64,000 nucleotides of DNA, taken from assembly GCF_006345805.1 (NCBI RefSeq), contig NC_043019.1, forward strand, positions 27,217,360-27,281,359, given 5' to 3'. The DNA comes from Octopus sinensis. Taxonomy: Eukaryota. Made by a program: the position numbers and the translations under genes. Position 1 is the stretch's first letter. Each line of letters starts with the position of its first letter. Below are positions 930 through 63,617 of this stretch, in pieces. The notes below the pieces were generated by a model. That model made no database searches, was not told where the DNA came from, and was given only the letters and a program-made list of their open reading frames with translations.

Positions 930-1135
930 AATGGTGTCGATGAGACCCAAAAGTGTCAGGTAATGCTGAATAAGTGCTATAGACAGACCACTTTTCTGCT
1001 CACACCATCTCCGATGAAGGGATATTATTATTAATTAATATTCTAGATACAGCTGTAAGACCTTCTATCTATAAATGCTCTAATATCTATACAGCCTTGG
1101 GTTTTTTTATCTCATTACGCAAAAAATTCACATAT
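930..1135 (+). mobile_element. Probable Penelope-like terminal-repeat fragment
   Basis: Shares flanks with 34690-35006 and carries a hammerhead-like motif. PLE origin is inferred. Confidence 0.5.
1008..1060 (+). ncRNA. Hammerhead-like motif, CCGAUGA core variant, degenerate
   Basis: TCT CCGATGA AGGGATATT...AATATTCTA GATA CAGCT GTA AGA; palindromic ACAGCTGT; GAAA is altered to GATA. Confidence 0.4.
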
Positions 1136-1141
1136 ATATAT

Positions 1142-1183
<42 letters not shown>

Positions 1184-2615: not shown

Positions 2616-2664
2616 TATTTAATTAGAAATAGTGCATTTCTAAATCTTTCAGAGAGATTTATAC

Positions 2665-3032
2665 AGTAGCAGCACGATAAAGTGATGGTTTGTTGCCAAC
2701 TTAATGTGGCATTCCCAGGAAAGGGAAGAATACTACTGTTATTTAGCTCCGGGAAACATTATTTCCAGTTGGCTATGTGACACAAGCGTTCTGTGTCCTT
2801 CGCATTGTTTTAGACTTCAAATGATGCCACCCCACTGGCTAAGCGAGCAGGCCAACAGAAGGAAGATTAAGAGAAAGTTGTGGTGAAAGAGTACAGCAAG
2901 GATCGCCACCACCCCCTGCCGGAGCCTCATGGAGCTTCAGGTGTTTTCGCTCAATAAACACTCGGTCTGGGAATCGAAACCGTGATCCTATGATCGTGAG
3001 TCTGCTGCCCTAACCACTGGGCCATTGTGCCT
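2665..3032 (-). mobile_element. SINE family E (tRNA-derived)
   Basis: Reverse complement of 42014-42315. Confidence 0.82.
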
Positions 3033-5145: not shown

Positions 5146-5760
5146 TAATAATAATAATAATAATGAGATTATTGTATACAGTGCTCAGGAAGCATGGAAG
5201 TTTTGAAGGATGCAGTGCTCCGACAACTAACAACCGATGCTGGCAGTTTGTTCCATGCTTCAGCAACTCTCAGCGTGAAAAAATGTTTCCTGAAGTCATG
5301 GGAGCTGTGCTGTTTTCTTACTTTGTAAATATGTCCACGGGTGTTAGATGGGTGGAGTTTGAAAAGGTGCTCAGAGTTATTGTTTGTACGATGGTTGATA
5401 ATTTTATGGGTGTCTACCAAGTCAGCTGCCAGATGTCGGAGTTTCAACGTGTCCATGCCCAGGGAAGTAAGGCGTTCAGGATATGGCAAATGCCTGATGG
5501 AGGGTATTCTTTTGGTTGCACGTCGCTGAACAGCTTCCAGACGATTGATATCCTGGGCAAGATAGGGGTTCCAGACCGGTGATGCAAATTCCAGGTGAGG
5601 TCTTACCATAGCTATATAAAGCCGCAGATAGATAGCCGGAGAGCGGCTCACAAAGGATTTGGTGAGTGATGCCAAGACACCCTCAGCCTTCTTGAATGTA
5701 ATTCCTCCCAGCCCCTCCAGTTTCCACTGAAGTGGCTTGGGAGACAGGAGGAGTAATAAA
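5146..5760 (-). mobile_element. CR1/L2-group LINE 3' fragment
   Basis: ORF 5169-5675: LYIAMVRPHLEFASPVWNP...LEAVQRRATK...YPERL...TRGH...FFTLRVAEAWNKLP, followed by a (TTA/ATT)n tail. Confidence 0.92.
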
Positions 5761-7343: not shown

Positions 7344-7397
7344 TATATATAATATATATATATATATAATCAAAATAAGCAACAAGAATGACTGGGT

Positions 7398-7488
7398 AAT
7401 TTGGTACGATCATTTCGTACTACATCATTTTATTAAATGTTGTAGGTATTACAACAGTTTTAAAATGCTGAGCACTCATCAGCCAATT
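7398..7488 (-). ncRNA. Type I hammerhead ribozyme motif (left arm of palindrome)
   Basis: Reverse-complement copy of 7562-7652: CTGATGA (rc 7476-82), GAAA (rc 7413-16), stem III ATGATCGT with one U-G pair, GTA (rc 7405-07). Confidence 0.68.
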
Positions 7489-7561
7489 ATAGAGGTTTTC
7501 CATTAATACAAAAATTTTGCCACTTGATATGAAAATTTTTGTATTAATGGAAAACCTCTAT

Positions 7562-7652
7562 AATTGGCTGATGAGTGCTCAGCATTTTAAAACTGTTGTA
7601 ATACTTACAACATTTAATAAAATGATGTAGAACGAAACGATCGTACCAAATT
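7562..7652 (+). ncRNA. Type I hammerhead ribozyme motif (right arm of palindrome)
   Basis: AATTGG / CCAAATT stem I; CTGATGA 7568-74; imperfect long stem II with TGTTGTA/TACAACA; GAAA 7634-37; palindromic stem III ACGATCGT; GTA triplet 7643-45. Confidence 0.72.
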
Positions 7653-22144: not shown

Positions 22145-22352
22145 ATGATTGTGTATATTTCGGCCTCAGCTATTTTGACAGTGGTAGCCACAGGTTTGCA
22201 ATTTGTTGGACTTTTCCTGCCAACCTGGTGGCGATCAATAAAAGAGAACCACAACTTGCAGATTTATTATTACTACGGAATCTGGAAATATCCATGGAAA
22301 GCAGAAGTATGCCAGGAGGATAAGTGCCATGAAGTTCCATATACAACCCTCA
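22145..22352 (+). CDS. Claudin/PMP22/EMP-like tetraspan membrane protein, coding exon 1 (TM1 + extracellular loop 1)
   Basis: ATG at 22145 is the first in-frame ATG after TAA 22103-05. Encodes MIVYISASAILTVVATGLQFVGLFLPTWWRSIKENHNLQIYYYYGIWKYPWKAEVCQEDKCHEVPYTTL: hydrophobic helix, then W...GIW...C...C, resembling the claudin-superfamily ECL1 signature. Donor CTCA|GTAAGT after 22352, phase 1. Confidence 0.85.
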
Positions 22353-31599: not shown

Positions 31600-31830
31600 G
31601 TTGATTAATGACTGAAAGAGAATGATCATGAATACAAGCAGCCGAAATGGGGATCCTTTGAAGGACATCTGGTGTAATGTTACTTGACTGGGTGCATAGC
31701 TTGGACATCAGGGTGTCTCTCCAGATTGAGCTATTACTTCTCTGCATTGGGATGCCACTGTTCCGGTACTACGGACATGGGATTAGAATGTCTTGGTGTC
31801 TTAGGGAGATTTCAAACCTGGGTTCTCATT
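31600..31830 (+). mobile_element. RTE-like LINE relic
   Basis: IWCNVT...SLDIR...FRYYGHGIRM resembles RTE WMCNV...LRWYGHVxRM. Confidence 0.5.
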
Positions 31831-32444
31831 CCTAAGGTATTTTTCGATGTTGTTGTAGTTGTAGTTGTTGTTATTATTATTATTATTAATAATAAATATA
31901 TATAAATATGGTGGTGGTGGTGGTGGCACAGCTGATACTGGTGGGGGGGCTGATGATGGTAGTGGTGGTGGAGGTGGCAGCAGTGGAAAGGGTAGTGTTA
32001 GGGTGGGAAGTGTCACCAAAAGGTAAACCACATGGAAAAACTGTTTATTGATGTTTCACATTTTTCTTCTTGTTCGATGTTTCCTTTTATTCTCAACCCC
32101 ACACACCTTACACACACTTCGCACACACATTCACACACGCTTCACACCTTTGTTCCTTTGAAATGTTGTTAAAGGCTTTCAATTAGAAAAAAATGCTTGG
32201 GTTATATAACTTGGTGAACAGGGAAGAAAGGTGTCTTAGCATGGTTGGTGTGCATGTTGTTGTTGCTGTGTATGCATGAGTATGTTTATATACATGAGCC
32301 TGTGTACATGTGTGTGTGTGAGAGAGAGAGCGAAAACTATTAAATGGGAGCAGTTTGACTCAATATGTCTGATTAACTGATCATGTTTCTTCATGGCCAT
32401 GGAACTTTAAGTAACACGAGGAAACGGGTTAATGAAAATCTATC

Positions 32445-34689: not shown

Positions 34690-35006
34690 GAGGTAATGGT
34701 GTCGTTGAGAGCCAAAGGTTCAGGTAATGCTGAATAAGTGCTATAGATGGACTGCAGTTAAGTTCCAGATTTGATTATGCGAATAAGAGGTTCAACATTG
34801 GTCATATGTCAACGTGTGTATATAAAAATTTTATTTTGTAAAGAGATAAAAAACCAAGGCTTTGTAGATTTTAGAACAATAATAGATAGGTCTTACAGCT
34901 GTTTCCAGGATATTTATTATCTCCCTTCATCGGACATGAGAGGATGTTCTGAAATCTACACAGCCTTGGTTTTTTATCTCATTATGAAATAAAATTTATA
35001 TATATA
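34690..35006. mobile_element. Probable Penelope-like terminal repeat with inverted arms
   Basis: About 62-bp inverted arms (34817-34878, 34945-35006) flank a hammerhead-like motif; similar to 930-1135. Confidence 0.5.
34891..34936 (-). ncRNA. Hammerhead-like motif, CCGAUGA core variant
   Basis: - strand: CCGATGA AGGGAGATA ATAAA TATCCTG GAAA CAGCT GTA AGA; stem I is weak in this copy. Confidence 0.42.
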
Positions 35007-35394
35007 CAAATATAAAAATGGGACAAAAATGCATTAGAGAACAGATAGACACTACAAAGGCGGACAAGAAAGAAACAACAATTAGAAGGATAGGCAAAAA
35101 AAATAGACATGTCATTCAGGGCTTTCTTTCCTCAGTCAAGTTCCAGAAGTCATAACCATTTTAGGCAGTTACACTTAAGATGGTTCGATCTGGTTGCTCC
35201 CAAAAAAGTCTAAGCTAAGAGCATTAGATCCCTTTGTAAGAAAGCTAGTGAATGTGTACGACAGCAAAGACAAAAAAACGGAGAACATGGTACACAATTA
35301 CGAATACAAACAACAAGAAACAACAACAGGTGTCTTTCGACTGAGAACGAATCAAATTGAGCTGGCGGGTATTAAGTGAAAGCCTAACACACGC

Positions 35395-42898: not shown

Positions 42899-42935
42899 AT
42901 ATATATCAAAATAAAAACATGATGCAAAGGATTTA

Positions 42936-43022
42936 GCGGTACATATGTTTCGGGCCTTTATTAGACGGTTTATAACAATGCATAATTGATGTAAATGTGT
43001 GTCTATAGCCTTCTTCAGCCGC
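42936..43022 (-). ncRNA. Type I hammerhead ribozyme motif
   Basis: On - strand: GCGG CTGAAGA AGGC-TATAGAC...GTCTAATAAAG-GCCC GAAA CATAT GTA CCGC. Stem I GCGG/CCGC; palindromic stem III ACATATGT. Confidence 0.68.
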
Positions 43023-43194
43023 ATACAATTACTACTTCAAGGAGATGTATTACATTATAAGTTTTACGTTGGGGATGTGAATCCTCATAGTGGCATACGA
43101 CAGAGCGAGGCACCAGAACAAAATCAAAGCATCCATCCCAAGGATAAGCATATTAAAAAGGGGCCCATGAGAAAACTCATTTAAATAAAGGGTT

Positions 43195-50890: not shown

Positions 50891-51099
50891 TGATTATTAT
50901 TATTATTATTATATTTGTACATCAACCAAATCAGAAAAAATCCAATAATGGAAAAGTAATGCCTTAAATCAATCCAAAAATGTTTCTATGCTCATTGGTT
51001 TTAACCATGAAGTTTTTCAGGAGGACATTCAAAGCATCTGCATTGACTCCTGCACCCAAGCCTATGTTTCTGACTTCTACCACCATTTATATTTTTCAG

Positions 51100-51276
51100 T
51101 GACCCCTACATGGTTAGTATTTACACGGCTGTTTGAAGTTGCTGGGGCAGGGTTCGGTATCCTGCTCATTGCCATCATGCTGATGTGGTTAGTGTTGCTG
51201 GGACCGATGAGGACCAAACATCTTGTAATTGCCAGAAAACTAGGACTGGTCTCCTCCTTCTTGCAAATTATCACAG
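51100..51276 (+). CDS. Claudin/PMP22-like protein, coding exon 2 (TM2, intracellular loop, start of TM3)
   Basis: Acceptor ATTTTTCAG| at 51099, donor ACAG|GTCAGT after 51276; 177 nt, phase 1-1. Joins exon 1 in frame (A+TG): MTPTWLVFTRLFEVAGAGFGILLIAIMLMWLVLLGPMRTKHLVIARKLGLVSSFLQIIT. Confidence 0.85.
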
Positions 51277-51612
51277 GTCAGTACCTCTCTCTTTCTCATT
51301 TTCTTTATCCATATATATATAGTAAATAAAATTTTATTTACTAAAATAAGTCAGAAAAAATGGTCCAGGAAAGAAATGGTAAATGTTTTTATATTTCATT
51401 CCCTTCGAGAATTTATCCCTAATGAGTGGTTTGGATTTTAGCTGTTCTTTCTAGCGTAAAGGATTCCTATGATGGAAACCTCTTAATGTGTTTAAATGTA
51501 CACTGTATTCTATATGAATAATATTTAGTCTATTGACTAATTTTTCTATACGCTAGGCCACTAGTAGTAAAAATTTCTAAAATCTTTATTACCCTGTTAT
51601 TATTACTTATAT

Positions 51613-51647
<35 letters not shown>

Positions 51648-51733
51648 CATGCATATATATATACATATGCATATATATATATACACACACACACACATAC
51701 ATATACATACATATGTATATGCATATATATATG

Positions 51734-51777
<44 letters not shown>

Positions 51778-52096
51778 ATATATACATGTCAGAAATATTA
51801 AATTTCTAAATATCTCATAGAGATATGTACGGTGGTGGGGCGATATAATGGTTGTATACTGTCAACTCAACGTGACAGTAGGGGATTACACCACTGCTGT
51901 TTAGCCCTAGGGAACATCGATGCTTCCTGTCGGCTTCGACACACTTACTGTGTCCTTATATATTTACGAAGGGGAGACAAATGTCTTCGTGCGGAAATTT
52001 GTATGTATATTTTAAAATTATAAGTATATGAAAGAATGGGCTCCTTGAGAGCAGTCAGCTAAAAGTTTTTTGTGCATTTTGATGTCGACATAAGTT

Positions 52097-52191
52097 CCTT
52101 GATTTTCCTGATGAGAAATCTGCATAATGTACTCCTTATTCCTTCGGAATTAGGAATATGCAGCCTTCGAAACATATGTCGAGAATAAAGG
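52097..52191 (+). ncRNA. Type I hammerhead ribozyme motif with intact core
   Basis: Stem I CCTTGATTTTC (52097-107) / GAGAATAAAGG (52181-91); CTGATGA 52108-14; long stem II (CTGCATA/TATGCAG, apical CTTCGG); GAAA 52169-72; palindromic stem III ACATATGT; GTC cleavage triplet 52178-80. Confidence 0.8.
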
Positions 52192-52897
52192 ATATTTGTT
52201 AACTAGTCGTTCAACTCCATTCTTTCACATACTTATAATTTTAATATATATATATATATATATAAGCTGCTTCTCTAACTAAGAAATAAATCTCATTGAA
52301 ATGTAGCAATTTAGATAACATGACAGCACTTGCATATTTTGAAAGTTCTACTTACAATTAAATATTGAGAATTGTGGTTAGCTGGTTGCATTCCTTGTCT
52401 AAAAAGATTAGCTTTTCAAGACAGCTACTTTAAACAGTTAGGATCATAATCAGGTGTGCCAATTTTGAGGTAAAGATTTATGATCCGATTCTAGCAGGTT
52501 TAAGTTTAATGGTATTGATTTCCTCTATAATCTTTGTTAATTCCCAGGTGTAGAGTTGAACACAAGTTATGTGTTCAGCTTCTTCTCATCCAATGTGCCA
52601 CTGACTCCTGCCACATGATTCTTGTCTCCATCTATATCATGTTTCAAACTATACTATCTTCCTCTCATTTGGATGGGGATCTCCTACTGAGATCCCTTTT
52701 GTTTTCTTTTTTTCAATGTACTCAACACAGGAGATTATTATATGAAATTTATATAGACTTGGGTATGGCTGTGTCGTAAGAATTTTGCTTCCCAGTCACA
52801 TGGTTCTGGGTTCAGTCCTACTGTGTGATACTATAGGCAAGTGCCTTCTACTATAGCCCCACTCCTCAACAAAAGACAAGACGGTATACAAAACTGC

Positions 52898-62934: not shown

Positions 62935-63617
62935 TAGAAAAGGAACTCATATGGGTCCTAATACCTTGTCTTAAAATTTATTGTACTACCTATATAACTT
63001 ATCCAAACCATTCTCCTCTTTAACCATGCATTTATATACTACATTAGTCATGAGACAGAACCCCTTAAGGGGACATATGTCAGGGTCTCTACAATTGCAC
63101 AATTTACCAGATCCATCCTTAACCCTATTATTAATACTGACACTACTACCTAATTGGCTTCCTGCATTTCTTCATATATTTCACTACCAGGGCTTGATGA
63201 GACCAGTGGGAGCAAATGGTTTGTAGTACTCACTACAGGCATGTTTGAGTTAACCAGTTCTATATCAGAGGAATATTTCTTTTGCCATTGTCCATTTAAT
63301 TTGTTCCTATTAATGGACACAATAATAGAGACTAAGTTAGGCATTGCCAAATAGAACTTAATAGAAGACTTATTACAGATACTGTAATATTTATGATCCT
63401 TTGAGAAATTCTCCTTCAGAATCCTAAAGAACATCTTGGGTAAATTTCTAACTGTAAGGGAAAAAGGAAGAGCGAACCATAAAACCTCGCGTATAGACCG
63501 CAAGCTTTTTGTTTTTACTATCGCCCCACTGTCACTATCTGAATTCTGATATTTGTTCCAATATGTATGGCTAGTCGAAGACTTAACTTGATTGCATTCT
63601 AAGTTAATTGAAAACAA
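62935..63617 (-). mobile_element. Penelope-like retroelement relic: RT thumb/linker plus GIY-YIG endonuclease
   Basis: ORF 63150-63617 has LWFALPFSLTV...FFRILKENFSKDHKYYSICNKSSIKFYLAMPNLVSII, like the PLE WFNPPFS...YSCMPN region. Frameshifted continuation: CNCRDPDICPLKGFCLMTNVVYKC (CNC...CL = rc 63052-63099), then YIGSTINFKTRY (YIG = rc 62988-96) and HMSSFSNERYR. Confidence 0.85.

What the first reader, a model, noticed from the sequence alone, without database searches (positions are those of the whole stretch)
52097..52191. Intact hammerhead ribozyme on the sense strand of intron 2 of the claudin-like gene
Seen: every type I element is present (11-nt stem I with one mismatch, CUGAUGA, GAAA, GUC) with an unusually long stem II capped by a cUUCGg loop, about 820 nt downstream of the exon 2 donor. 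Known: Penelope-like elements carry hammerheads with palindromic stem III, some needing dimerisation. Inference: it could cleave the nascent pre-mRNA and affect splicing or termination. The three hammerhead-like motifs I found in intron 1 are all antisense.
Basis: partly seen in the sequence, partly recalled or inferred. Interest (0 to 1): 0.72.

Follow-up and report, generated by a model that had tools for sequence, protein, structure and literature searches.

The report
Transposon-borne hammerhead ribozyme in an octopus intron
The hammerhead self-cleaving RNA motif is really there, on the sense strand of an intron, but it sits in a 261-base block that is missing from the same intron in Octopus vulgaris, so it is most likely a young mobile-element copy and not a conserved regulator of the gene.

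Summary
Window 52097-52191 (+) holds every element of a type I hammerhead:
- an 11-position helix I with one A/G mismatch;
- CUGAUGA;
- a 54-nt helix II closed by cUUCGg;
- GAAA;
- an 8-nt palindromic helix III (ACAUAUGU);
- GUC, with cleavage expected after C52180.

Rfam's Hammerhead_1 model aligns it full length at 29.2 bits. That is below the gathering score of 34 because of a 50-nt insertion in helix II. Shuffles and a 2520-decoy core test argue against chance.

The gene context is also confirmed. It is a four-transmembrane LHFPL-family (claudin-like) gene on the + strand, with exon 2 ending at 51276 and exon 3 beyond the window.

The functional inference is not supported. In the Octopus vulgaris orthologous intron the flanks align at about 95%, but the 261-bp block carrying the ribozyme (51983-52243) is absent. 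A different 547-bp block with a different hammerhead-like module takes its place.

The block has 43-nt inverted arms, abuts a (TA)n microsatellite and has no second copy nearby. This is the signature of Penelope-like-element or retrozyme-type hammerheads. I read it as a solitary, lineage-specific mobile-element copy that probably cleaves weakly or not at all. The only unusual trait is the long helix II.

The parts
52097..52107 (+). Helix I, 5' strand (positions 2.11-2.1)
   Evidence: Pairs with 52181-52191 at 10 of 11 positions. Pair probabilities are 0.54-0.74 in isolation and 0.34-0.47 in longer contexts.
52108..52114 (+). Core C3-A9, CUGAUGA
   Evidence: Read directly. Aligned to the Rfam RF00163 consensus CUGAcGA.
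52115..52168 (+). Helix II, an extended 54-nt hairpin with G10.1-C11.1 at its base and a cUUCGg cap
   Evidence: MFE -15.5 kcal/mol, z = -3.75, 0 of 200 shuffles as stable. Rfam treats 50 nt of it as an insertion.
52169..52172 (+). Core G12 A13 A14 A15.1 (GAAA)
52172..52179 (+). Helix III, ACAUAUGU: 2 bp plus tetraloop as a monomer, an 8-bp intermolecular helix as a dimer
   Evidence: Monomer pair probability 0.01. Cofold of two copies gives -52.6 against 2 x -22.6 kcal/mol, with the 8-bp helix III formed.
52180..52180 (+). C17; predicted cleavage between 52180 and 52181
   Evidence: Position in the motif. Cleavage itself was not tested.
52181..52191 (+). Helix I, 3' strand (positions 1.1-1.11)
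51997..52039 (.). Left inverted arm flanking the ribozyme
   Evidence: 43 nt, 88% complementary to 52217-52259, with 177 nt between the arms. The inner 28 nt differ at one position. The 246-nt fold has z = -6.45.
52217..52259 (.). Right inverted arm; runs into the (TA)n
51983..52243 (+). Lineage-specific 261-bp block that carries the hammerhead
   Evidence: No counterpart at the orthologous O. vulgaris site or elsewhere in L003. No other copy in the window.
52244..52266 (.). (TA)n microsatellite abutting the 3' end of the block, 64 nt after the cleavage site
   Evidence: It is shared with O. vulgaris.
51789..51982 (+). Older repeat unit 'R1' immediately upstream; not part of the ribozyme block
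   Evidence: Orthologous in L003 at 31690-31882, plus an inverted 96% copy at L003 31981-32174. A 66% copy at window 2625-2800 has no hammerhead after it.
51100..51276 (+). Coding exon 2 of the LHFPL-like tetraspan gene (host gene)
   Evidence: 97% identical to P0001 residues 69-128. Acceptor tttttcag| and donor |gtcagt read.
22145..22351 (+). Coding exon 1 of the same gene
   Evidence: tblastn of P0001 aa 1-69, 98.6%

Best explanation
The motif is a genuine type I hammerhead ribozyme. It belongs to the metazoan class carried by Penelope-like retroelements (PLEs) and their non-autonomous derivatives, the non-LTR retrozymes.

It sits in a 261-bp, hairpin-shaped, AT-rich block that entered, or was rearranged into, the junction between an older repeat and a (TA)n microsatellite. 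This happened after the split from Octopus vulgaris.

In the parent element, hammerheads of this class are thought to cut the element's own multimeric or read-through transcripts. They work best when two copies pair through the palindromic helix III.

Here the copy is solitary and is transcribed only as part of intron 2 of an LHFPL-like gene. It probably cleaves slowly or not at all and is a passenger. Any cleavage would fall inside an intron about 20 kb long and need not disturb splicing.

Shown: the motif, its statistical support, the gene and strand, the absence from the ortholog, the inverted arms, and the (TA)n adjacency.

Inferred: the PLE/retrozyme origin, low activity, and lack of host function.
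For: Motif and significance.

Lineage-specific block:
- Window 50900-51982 aligns to L003 30818-31882 at 94.9%, and window 52244-52897 aligns to L003 32430-33094 at 94.3%.
- Nothing matches 51983-52243.
- L003 instead holds a 547-bp block with two inverted copies of another hammerhead-like module.

PLE/retrozyme signature:
- Helix III of 2 bp plus a palindromic tetraloop and a G10.1-C11.1 pair are listed as family traits in PMC4209133 and PMC7229834.
- PMC8557442 describes insertion bias for (TA)n, hammerheads near the 3' end, heavy 5' truncation, and inverted truncated copies that create flanking inverted repeats. The block matches all of these: (TA)n 64 nt 3' of the cleavage site, and 43-nt inverted arms.
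- The two other hammerhead-like motifs in the window also have a (TA)n 34-37 nt 3' of the cleavage site. One of them (42907-43139) is likewise missing at the O. vulgaris orthologous site.
- Unit size (about 240-260 nt), 33-36% GC and a strongly self-paired fold match retrozyme monomers.
- About 43% of Xenopus retrozyme copies are intronic, and solo monomers are common. An intronic solo copy is therefore ordinary.

Low activity:
- Single PLE-type motifs showed no detectable cleavage in vitro.
- Monomer helix III probability is 0.01.
- There is no same-strand partner in the window.
Against: - No reverse transcriptase or GIY-YIG ORF lies next to the block, and no second copy of the block was available. 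The PLE assignment therefore rests on architecture, not homology.
- Without an outgroup, loss or replacement in O. vulgaris cannot be told from gain in the window's lineage.
- Terminal inverted repeats next to TA are also what a TA-targeting DNA-transposon MITE would show.
- Helix III of 2 bp plus a tetraloop is the 'invertebrate' form. The comparable axolotl motif self-cleaved 22% in one hour as a monomer, and invertebrate retrozyme hammerheads do better. Real monomer activity is not excluded.
- Helix I is longer (11 bp) and helix II much longer (54 nt) than in described PLE or retrozyme hammerheads.
Confidence: 0.6

Rival explanations
1. The block is a miniature inverted-repeat DNA transposon (MITE or foldback element) that targets TA. 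The hammerhead is either carried by it or is a fortunate by-product of its hairpin-rich sequence.
For: - 43-nt terminal inverted arms, with the inner 28 nt differing at one position; size about 240 bp; TA-rich flanks.
- The window and L003 hold other small inverted-repeat elements with hammerhead-like cores: 7434-7620, and L003 14730-14960 with copies at window 34809-35012 and 985-1145.
Against: - The hammerhead's helix I is not formed by the arms. It lies 57 nt and 25 nt inside them.
- The decoy test on the real, hairpin-rich sequence shows that only the true catalytic core recurs.
- PLE insertions are themselves described as producing flanking inverted repeats and preferring (TA)n.
- No second copy with the same arms was found in 117 kb.
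Confidence: 0.17
2. The hammerhead is an exapted cis-acting element of the LHFPL-like gene. It cleaves the nascent intron 2 RNA and so tunes splicing or premature termination, in the manner proposed for conserved intronic hammerheads of amniotes.
For: - Sense orientation inside a transcribed intron.
- All core nucleotides intact.
- The hammerhead-compatible fold has 35-70% ensemble probability for helices I and II.
Against: - Absent from the orthologous intron of O. vulgaris, where the protein is 97-99% identical.
- Solitary copy with a dimer-type helix III.
- A near-identical inverted arm pair suggests recent origin, so the intact core needs no selection to explain it.
Confidence: 0.08
3. The motif is a chance match in AT-rich, microsatellite-rich DNA.
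For: - ACATATGT is over-represented in this window: 9 occurrences against about 2 expected.
- Rfam's score is below the gathering threshold.
- With a lenient descriptor, a 2-3 Gb genome would give thousands of random hits by extrapolation from 0.1 per window.
Against: - Helix I of 10 of 11 pairs was never reached in 200 shuffled windows.
- In the decoy-core test, only one of the 2519 decoy combinations gave any hit, and none gave two loci as the true core did.
- Full-length Rfam alignment with E = 8.3e-6 for the 121-nt search space.
- Helix II is significantly stable.
Confidence: 0.04

Closest known systems
Hammerheads of Penelope-like elements (Cervera and De la Pena 2014, PMC4209133; Craig et al. 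2021, PMC8557442)
   Same: Type I topology, G10.1-C11.1, and a short palindromic helix III suited to dimer formation. Location near the 3' end of a unit that abuts (TA)n. Inverted repeats flanking the unit. Mostly dispersed single, truncated copies.
   Different: No adjacent RT/EN ORF or pseudo-LTR could be shown. Helix I is 11 bp against the described 4-5 bp, and helix II is a 54-nt composite hairpin against 6-8 bp. There is no extra nucleotide between A9 and 10.1.
Metazoan non-LTR retrozymes (Cervera and de la Pena 2020, PMC7229834; Li et al. 2026 preprint, 10.64898/2026.07.22.740005)
   Same: Type I hammerhead with 2 bp plus a tetraloop in helix III ('invertebrate' form). Unit of about 240-260 nt, low GC, highly self-paired predicted RNA. 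Solo monomers and intronic copies are common.
   Different: Retrozymes are defined by tandem repeats that yield circular RNAs, and here there is one unit and one cleavage site. Helix II is far longer. No circular RNA evidence is available.
Rfam RF00163 Hammerhead_1 (newt satellite 2, Schistosoma Sm-alpha type)
   Same: Full-length alignment to the 45-position model, with the same palindromic 8-nt helix III register.
   Different: 29.2 bits, below the gathering score of 34, because of a 50-nt insertion in helix II. The loop-loop contacts of canonical members cannot be recognised.
[quoted passage not shown]
   Same: Sense-strand hammerhead inside an intron of a protein-coding gene.
   Different: Those are conserved at orthologous sites across many species. 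This one is absent from the closest available relative.

Membership tests
Hammerhead ribozyme, type I | Conserved core: C3 U4 G5 A6 N7 G8 A9, G12 A13 A14, A15.1-U16.1, H17 | tested here: met
   All present at 52108-52114, 52169-52172, 52179 and 52180.
Hammerhead ribozyme, type I | Three helices around the core, with helix I open-ended | tested here: met
   Helix I 10 of 11 pairs; helix II a stable hairpin (z = -3.75); helix III 2 bp plus a tetraloop, or 8 bp as a dimer.
Hammerhead ribozyme, type I | Score at or above the Rfam RF00163 gathering threshold (34 bits) | tested here: not met
   29.2 bits, E = 8.3e-6 on the 121-nt stretch. Missed entirely in the larger scans. The shortfall comes from the 50-nt insertion in helix II.
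Hammerhead ribozyme, type I | Site-specific Mg2+-dependent self-cleavage | not testable with these tools
   Needs in vitro transcription or mapping of RNA ends.
Penelope-like-element hammerhead | Palindromic 15.2-16.2 and loop 3; G10.1-C11.1 | tested here: met
   ACAUAUGU, and G52115-C52168. Criteria taken from PMC4209133.
Penelope-like-element hammerhead | Lies in the pseudo-LTR or 3' end of an element encoding RT and GIY-YIG EN | tested here: inconclusive
   No long ORF within several kb. A heavily 5'-truncated copy would carry none. No full-length element was available for comparison.
Penelope-like-element hammerhead | Insertion at microsatellites such as (TA)n, with inverted or partial-tandem copies | tested here: met
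   (TA)n directly 3' of the block, and 43-nt inverted arms. Criteria from PMC8557442.
Penelope-like-element hammerhead | Member of a multi-copy consensus family with covariation | not testable with these tools
   No other copy in the window or in 53 kb of O. vulgaris. No cephalopod genome can be searched by DNA here. One metagenome pattern scan found nothing.
Non-LTR retrozyme | Two or more tandem units, each with a hammerhead, giving unit-length (circular) RNA | tested here: not met
   Single unit and single cleavage site; no direct repeat of the unit.
Non-LTR retrozyme | Unit of about 150-400 nt, GC below 45%, highly self-paired | tested here: met
   About 240-260 nt. Rfam reports GC 0.36 for the motif. 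The 246-nt fold gives z = -6.45.
Conserved intronic regulatory hammerhead | Retained at the orthologous intron position in related species | tested here: not met
   Absent in O. vulgaris GCA_951406725.2 OX597836.1, although the flanks are 94-95% identical.
MITE (DNA transposon derivative) | Terminal inverted repeats plus a target-site duplication, in many copies | tested here: inconclusive
   Inverted arms are present. A TA duplication cannot be read inside TA-rich flanks. No further copies were seen.

The most novel reading that the evidence does not exclude
Octopus genomes hold an undescribed class of type I hammerheads with a 54-62-nt extended helix II.

The instances in hand:
- Three motifs in the window: C1 (52108-52180, +, the finding itself), helix II 54 nt; C2 (7482-7405, minus), 59 nt; C3 (43018-42940, minus), 60 nt.
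- One decayed copy in O. vulgaris (L003 52480-52400, minus), about 62 nt.
- They share no sequence outside the core.

These hammerheads would be carried by small hairpin-shaped elements that home to (TA)n microsatellites. The elements would turn over so fast that sister species carry different ribozyme modules at the same intronic site.

Sense-strand copies such as this one would then be able to cut host pre-mRNA.
Probability: 0.22. Interest if true: 0.55.

Novelty: new member of a known kind. Interest (0 to 1): 0.3.

Why it matters
Dispersed hammerheads from Penelope-like elements and retrozymes are already known to be abundant in invertebrate genomes, and many lie in introns. One more copy changes little.

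Two points give modest value:
- I found no cephalopod hammerhead description in the searchable literature. This copy and its neighbours have an unusually long helix II that pushes them under Rfam's threshold and through its speed filters. Standard annotation would therefore miss them.
- The same (TA)n-adjacent intronic site carries different ribozyme-bearing blocks in two close Octopus species. That offers a natural presence/absence pair for asking whether a sense-strand intronic hammerhead affects a host transcript.

Tried and rejected
- Rfam gathering scan of the whole window and an E<=10 scan of 700 nt: no hammerhead. This was a filter artefact and was overturned by the 121-nt scan.
- Self-BLAST of the block against the window: no other copy, only microsatellite noise.
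- Pattern scan of viral contigs: two hits at the level expected by chance from my own rough estimate of collection size; not followed.
- Pattern scan of metagenome contigs: none.
- Word-indexed protein search with the whole exon 2 ORF: nothing.
- Exact-protein look-ups of two window ORFs: nothing. The window's own genome is apparently not in those collections.
- Pfam on hydrophobic ORF fragments to find exons 1 and 3: nothing. Solved instead through the representative-library search.
- Idea that 51793-52243 is a single 450-bp insertion in (TA)n: rejected for now. The left 194 bp (R1) is orthologous in O. vulgaris and has an old paralog with no hammerhead after it.
- Idea that a short R1-like fragment precedes the X module in L003: the similarity is at null level, so I dropped it.
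- Homology among the three window hammerhead units and the L003 X module: none beyond the core. Global alignment of the two alternative blocks gives z = 2.1, driven by a 45-nt tail.
- tRNA-like SINE origin: ARAGORN found nothing.
- Outgroup for polarity: only Argonauta hians (73% protein identity) is available, which is too distant for intron alignment.

Full report
**Observation**

The window at 52097-52191 (+) reads ccttgattttc CTGATGA [54 nt] GAAA catatgtc gagaataaagg.

- The two outer 11-mers pair at 10 of 11 positions (one G.U, one G/A mismatch at the seventh position from the core).
- The 54-nt insert folds into a three-segment hairpin of 3 + 7 + 9 bp. A G-C pair sits at its base and c-UUCG-g at its tip.
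- GAAA is followed by ACATATGT. This is a 2-bp, AUAU-looped hairpin as a monomer and a perfect 8-nt palindrome.
- C52180 follows as position 17.

ViennaRNA recovers helices I and II in the MFE of the 95-mer. Helix II alone is far more stable than shuffles (z = -3.75, 0 of 200). Helix III has about 1% probability in a monomer. Two copies cofold with an 8-bp intermolecular helix III, at -52.6 against 2 x -22.6 kcal/mol.

**Is it more than chance?**

A descriptor scan finds this site as the only strong hit in the window. Markov-shuffled windows give 0.105 lenient hits each, and none of 200 has a helix I of 8 or more pairs.

Real octopus DNA is full of hairpins and ACATATGT-like microsatellite debris, so I also ran a decoy test on the unshuffled window. 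I took all 630 permutations of CTGATGA times the 4 permutations of GAAA, under the same helix rules. Only the true core gave two loci, and only one other decoy gave any hit.

Rfam at first reported nothing. Given only the 121-nt stretch, RF00163 Hammerhead_1 aligns over its whole length (1-45) to 52102-52186 at 29.2 bits, E = 8.3e-6. That is 5 bits under the gathering score because 50 nt stand where the model expects 10. The earlier misses were filter losses.

**Gene context**

A full-library HMMER search with the exon 2 peptide found P0001 (97% identical over residues 69-128). P0001 is a 246-aa Octopus vulgaris protein. It just passes the Pfam L_HMGIC_fpl cut-off (25.4 vs 25.2 bits). This is an LHFPL-type four-TM protein. 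'Claudin-like' is a fair label by my own knowledge of that superfamily.

tblastn places exon 1 at 22145-22351 and exon 2 at about 51100-51276, both on the + strand. Exon 3 is not in the window. In O. vulgaris exon 3 lies 19.9 kb after exon 2. The hammerhead is therefore on the sense strand, 821 nt into intron 2, as claimed.

**Surroundings**

The ribozyme is enclosed by a 43-nt inverted repeat, 51997-52039 and 52217-52259. It is 88% complementary overall, and the inner 28 nt differ at one position. The 246-nt RNA folds with z = -6.45.

The right arm runs straight into a (TA)n tract at 52244-52266. Upstream lies a 194-bp repeat, R1 (51789-51982). R1 has an old 66% copy at 2625-2800 that is not followed by any hammerhead. 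The block itself has no second copy in the window.

**Orthologous site**

The look-up of encoding contigs returned the O. vulgaris gene with its introns: L003, from GCA_951406725.2 OX597836.1.

- Window 50900-51982 aligns to L003 30818-31882 at 94.9%.
- Window 52244-52897 aligns to L003 32430-33094 at 94.3%.
- The 261 bp between them, which is exactly the hammerhead block, has no match there or anywhere else in L003.

O. vulgaris instead has 547 bp made of:
- a 98-nt module X in minus orientation;
- a complete inverted copy of R1 (96%);
- a spacer;
- X in plus orientation;
- a tail leading into the (TA)n.

X is itself hammerhead-like: tctaga-CCGATGA-tgggcaaagaacc-tGAAA-catgcatgTC-tctaga. It has a 10-nt palindromic helix III, but C in place of U4. 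The only similarity between the two alternative blocks is a roughly 45-nt tail next to the (TA)n.

The site is instead a place where ribozyme-bearing repeats come and go.

**A local pattern**

Relaxing N4 and N7 gives three motifs in the window:
- C1, the finding itself;
- C2 (7482-7405, minus strand);
- C3 (43018-42940, minus strand; core CUGAAGA).

All three have a palindromic helix III and a helix II of 54, 59 and 60 nt. The null expectation is 0.21 hits per window, and 0 with a palindromic helix III. Each has a (TA)n 34-64 nt 3' of the predicted cleavage site.

- C2 scores 14.8 bits with RF00163 (E = 0.45) and lies inside an 88-nt inverted duplication.
- C3 gets no Rfam hit and its helix II is not stable. 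Its 233-bp block is also missing at the O. vulgaris orthologous site.
- L003 has a further decayed example (52480-52400, minus strand): GAGA for GAAA, the same ACAUAUGU, and a helix II of about 62 nt.

None of these units shares sequence with C1 beyond the core.

**Interpretation**

The published traits of metazoan PLE and retrozyme hammerheads are:
- type I topology;
- G10.1-C11.1;
- a 1-2-bp helix III with a palindromic loop, suited to dimers;
- extreme sequence diversity between copies;
- mostly dispersed single, truncated copies;
- hammerheads near element 3' ends;
- insertion bias for (TA)n;
- inverted truncated copies that create flanking inverted repeats.

The block matches these point by point. 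Its size, low GC and self-paired fold also match retrozyme monomers. In Xenopus about 43% of retrozyme copies are intronic and solo monomers are evenly spread.

I therefore read it as a solitary, lineage-specific copy of such an element. In that family, single motifs cleaved undetectably in vitro and dimers only weakly. However, 2-bp-plus-tetraloop helix III forms reach about 22% per hour or better as monomers. With no same-strand partner in the window, I expect slow or no cleavage and no role for the host gene.

**What remains open**

- I could not show homology to a PLE, because no RT/EN ORF is nearby and no cephalopod genome can be searched by DNA here.
- I could not polarise gain against loss without an outgroup.
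- I could not separate a retroelement fragment from a TA-targeting MITE, which would also give inverted arms next to TA.
- The long helix II is outside published descriptions. It recurs locally, which is the one possibly new aspect.

**Verdict**

This is a real hammerhead and it is correctly located. It is an ordinary, mobile-element-derived kind, with a long helix II as a minor structural novelty. The proposed effect on the host pre-mRNA is unsupported and made unlikely by its absence from O. vulgaris.

Noticed in passing
L003 31883-32429 (O. vulgaris, orthologous to window 51983-52243): A different 547-bp block occupies the site. It holds two inverted 97%-identical copies of a 98-nt hairpin module X flanking a full inverted duplicate of repeat R1. 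X has a hammerhead-like motif with CCGAUGA (C in place of U4), a U.U at the base of helix II, and a 10-nt palindromic helix III ACAUGCAUGU.
   Followed up: partly
window 7393-7620 (minus strand): Second hammerhead-like motif: CUGAUGA, 59-nt helix II, helix III AUGAUCGU, H17 = A, helix I only 4-5 bp. RF00163 gives 14.8 bits, E = 0.45. Its 5' half is part of an 88-nt near-perfect inverted duplication (7620-7533 / 7521-7434). A (TA)n starts 37 nt after the cleavage site. It lies upstream of coding exon 1, not in intron 1.
   Followed up: partly
window 42907-43139 (minus strand; motif 43018-42940): Third, weak hammerhead-like motif in intron 1, antisense: CUGAAGA, 60-nt poorly paired helix II, the same ACAUAUGU helix III, H17 = A, and 34 nt from a (TA)n. 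Its 233-bp block is absent at the O. vulgaris orthologous site, which holds an unrelated 767 bp (L003 22217-22984).
   Followed up: partly
L003 14730-14960; window 34809-35012 and 985-1145: A roughly 190-bp element family with inverted terminal arms of about 50 nt that contains CCGATGA-[7-bp helix]-GAAA-CAGCTGT-A. It is conserved between the two species at 85%. The paralog at window 985-1145 has GATA in place of GAAA. It is either a decayed hammerhead variant or a look-alike.
   Followed up: partly
L003 52400-52480 (minus strand): Decayed long-helix-II hammerhead just past the 3' end of the LHFPL-like gene in O. vulgaris: CUGAUGA, helix II of about 62 nt with a 7-bp UAGCUAG stem, GAGA instead of GAAA, and ACAUAUGU-A. 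It lies about 90 nt from a TA/CA microsatellite.
   Followed up: no
window 63150-63617 (minus strand); L003 43641-44108: A 155-aa ORF kept open and nearly identical in both species inside intron 2. It has no Pfam hit. From memory, its 'KFYLAMPNLVSII' stretch resembles the N-terminal part of GIY-YIG-type mobile-element proteins of invertebrates. This was not tested.
   Followed up: partly
window 5169-5675 (minus strand): A 168-aa ORF that by eye looks like the C-terminal region of a non-LTR (LINE) reverse transcriptase ('YLRLYIAMVRPHLEFASPVWNPY'). It has no Pfam hit at E<=1.
   Followed up: partly
window 51036-51160 (+): The reading frame that runs from the intron into exon 2 (ICIDSCTQAYVSDFYHHLYFSVTPTW...) matches single repeat units of very large repeat proteins many times over (E down to 6.5e-27, summed over up to 10 stretches). 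This is probably a repeat-amplified chance similarity, since the first 26 residues are intronic in the O. vulgaris gene model.
   Followed up: no
window 51789-51982; 2625-2800; L003 31690-31882 and 31981-32174: R1 is a discrete 194-bp repeat unit bounded on its left by (TA)n. It has an old 66% paralog and, in O. vulgaris only, a young inverted duplicate. Its class is unknown; ARAGORN found no tRNA-like part.
   Followed up: partly
whole window (method note): Rfam cmscan with default or moderately lax filters misses a full-length 29-bit Hammerhead_1 match when the search stretch is 700 nt or more. Hammerheads with long helix II inserts will be under-annotated by routine scans.
   Followed up: yes
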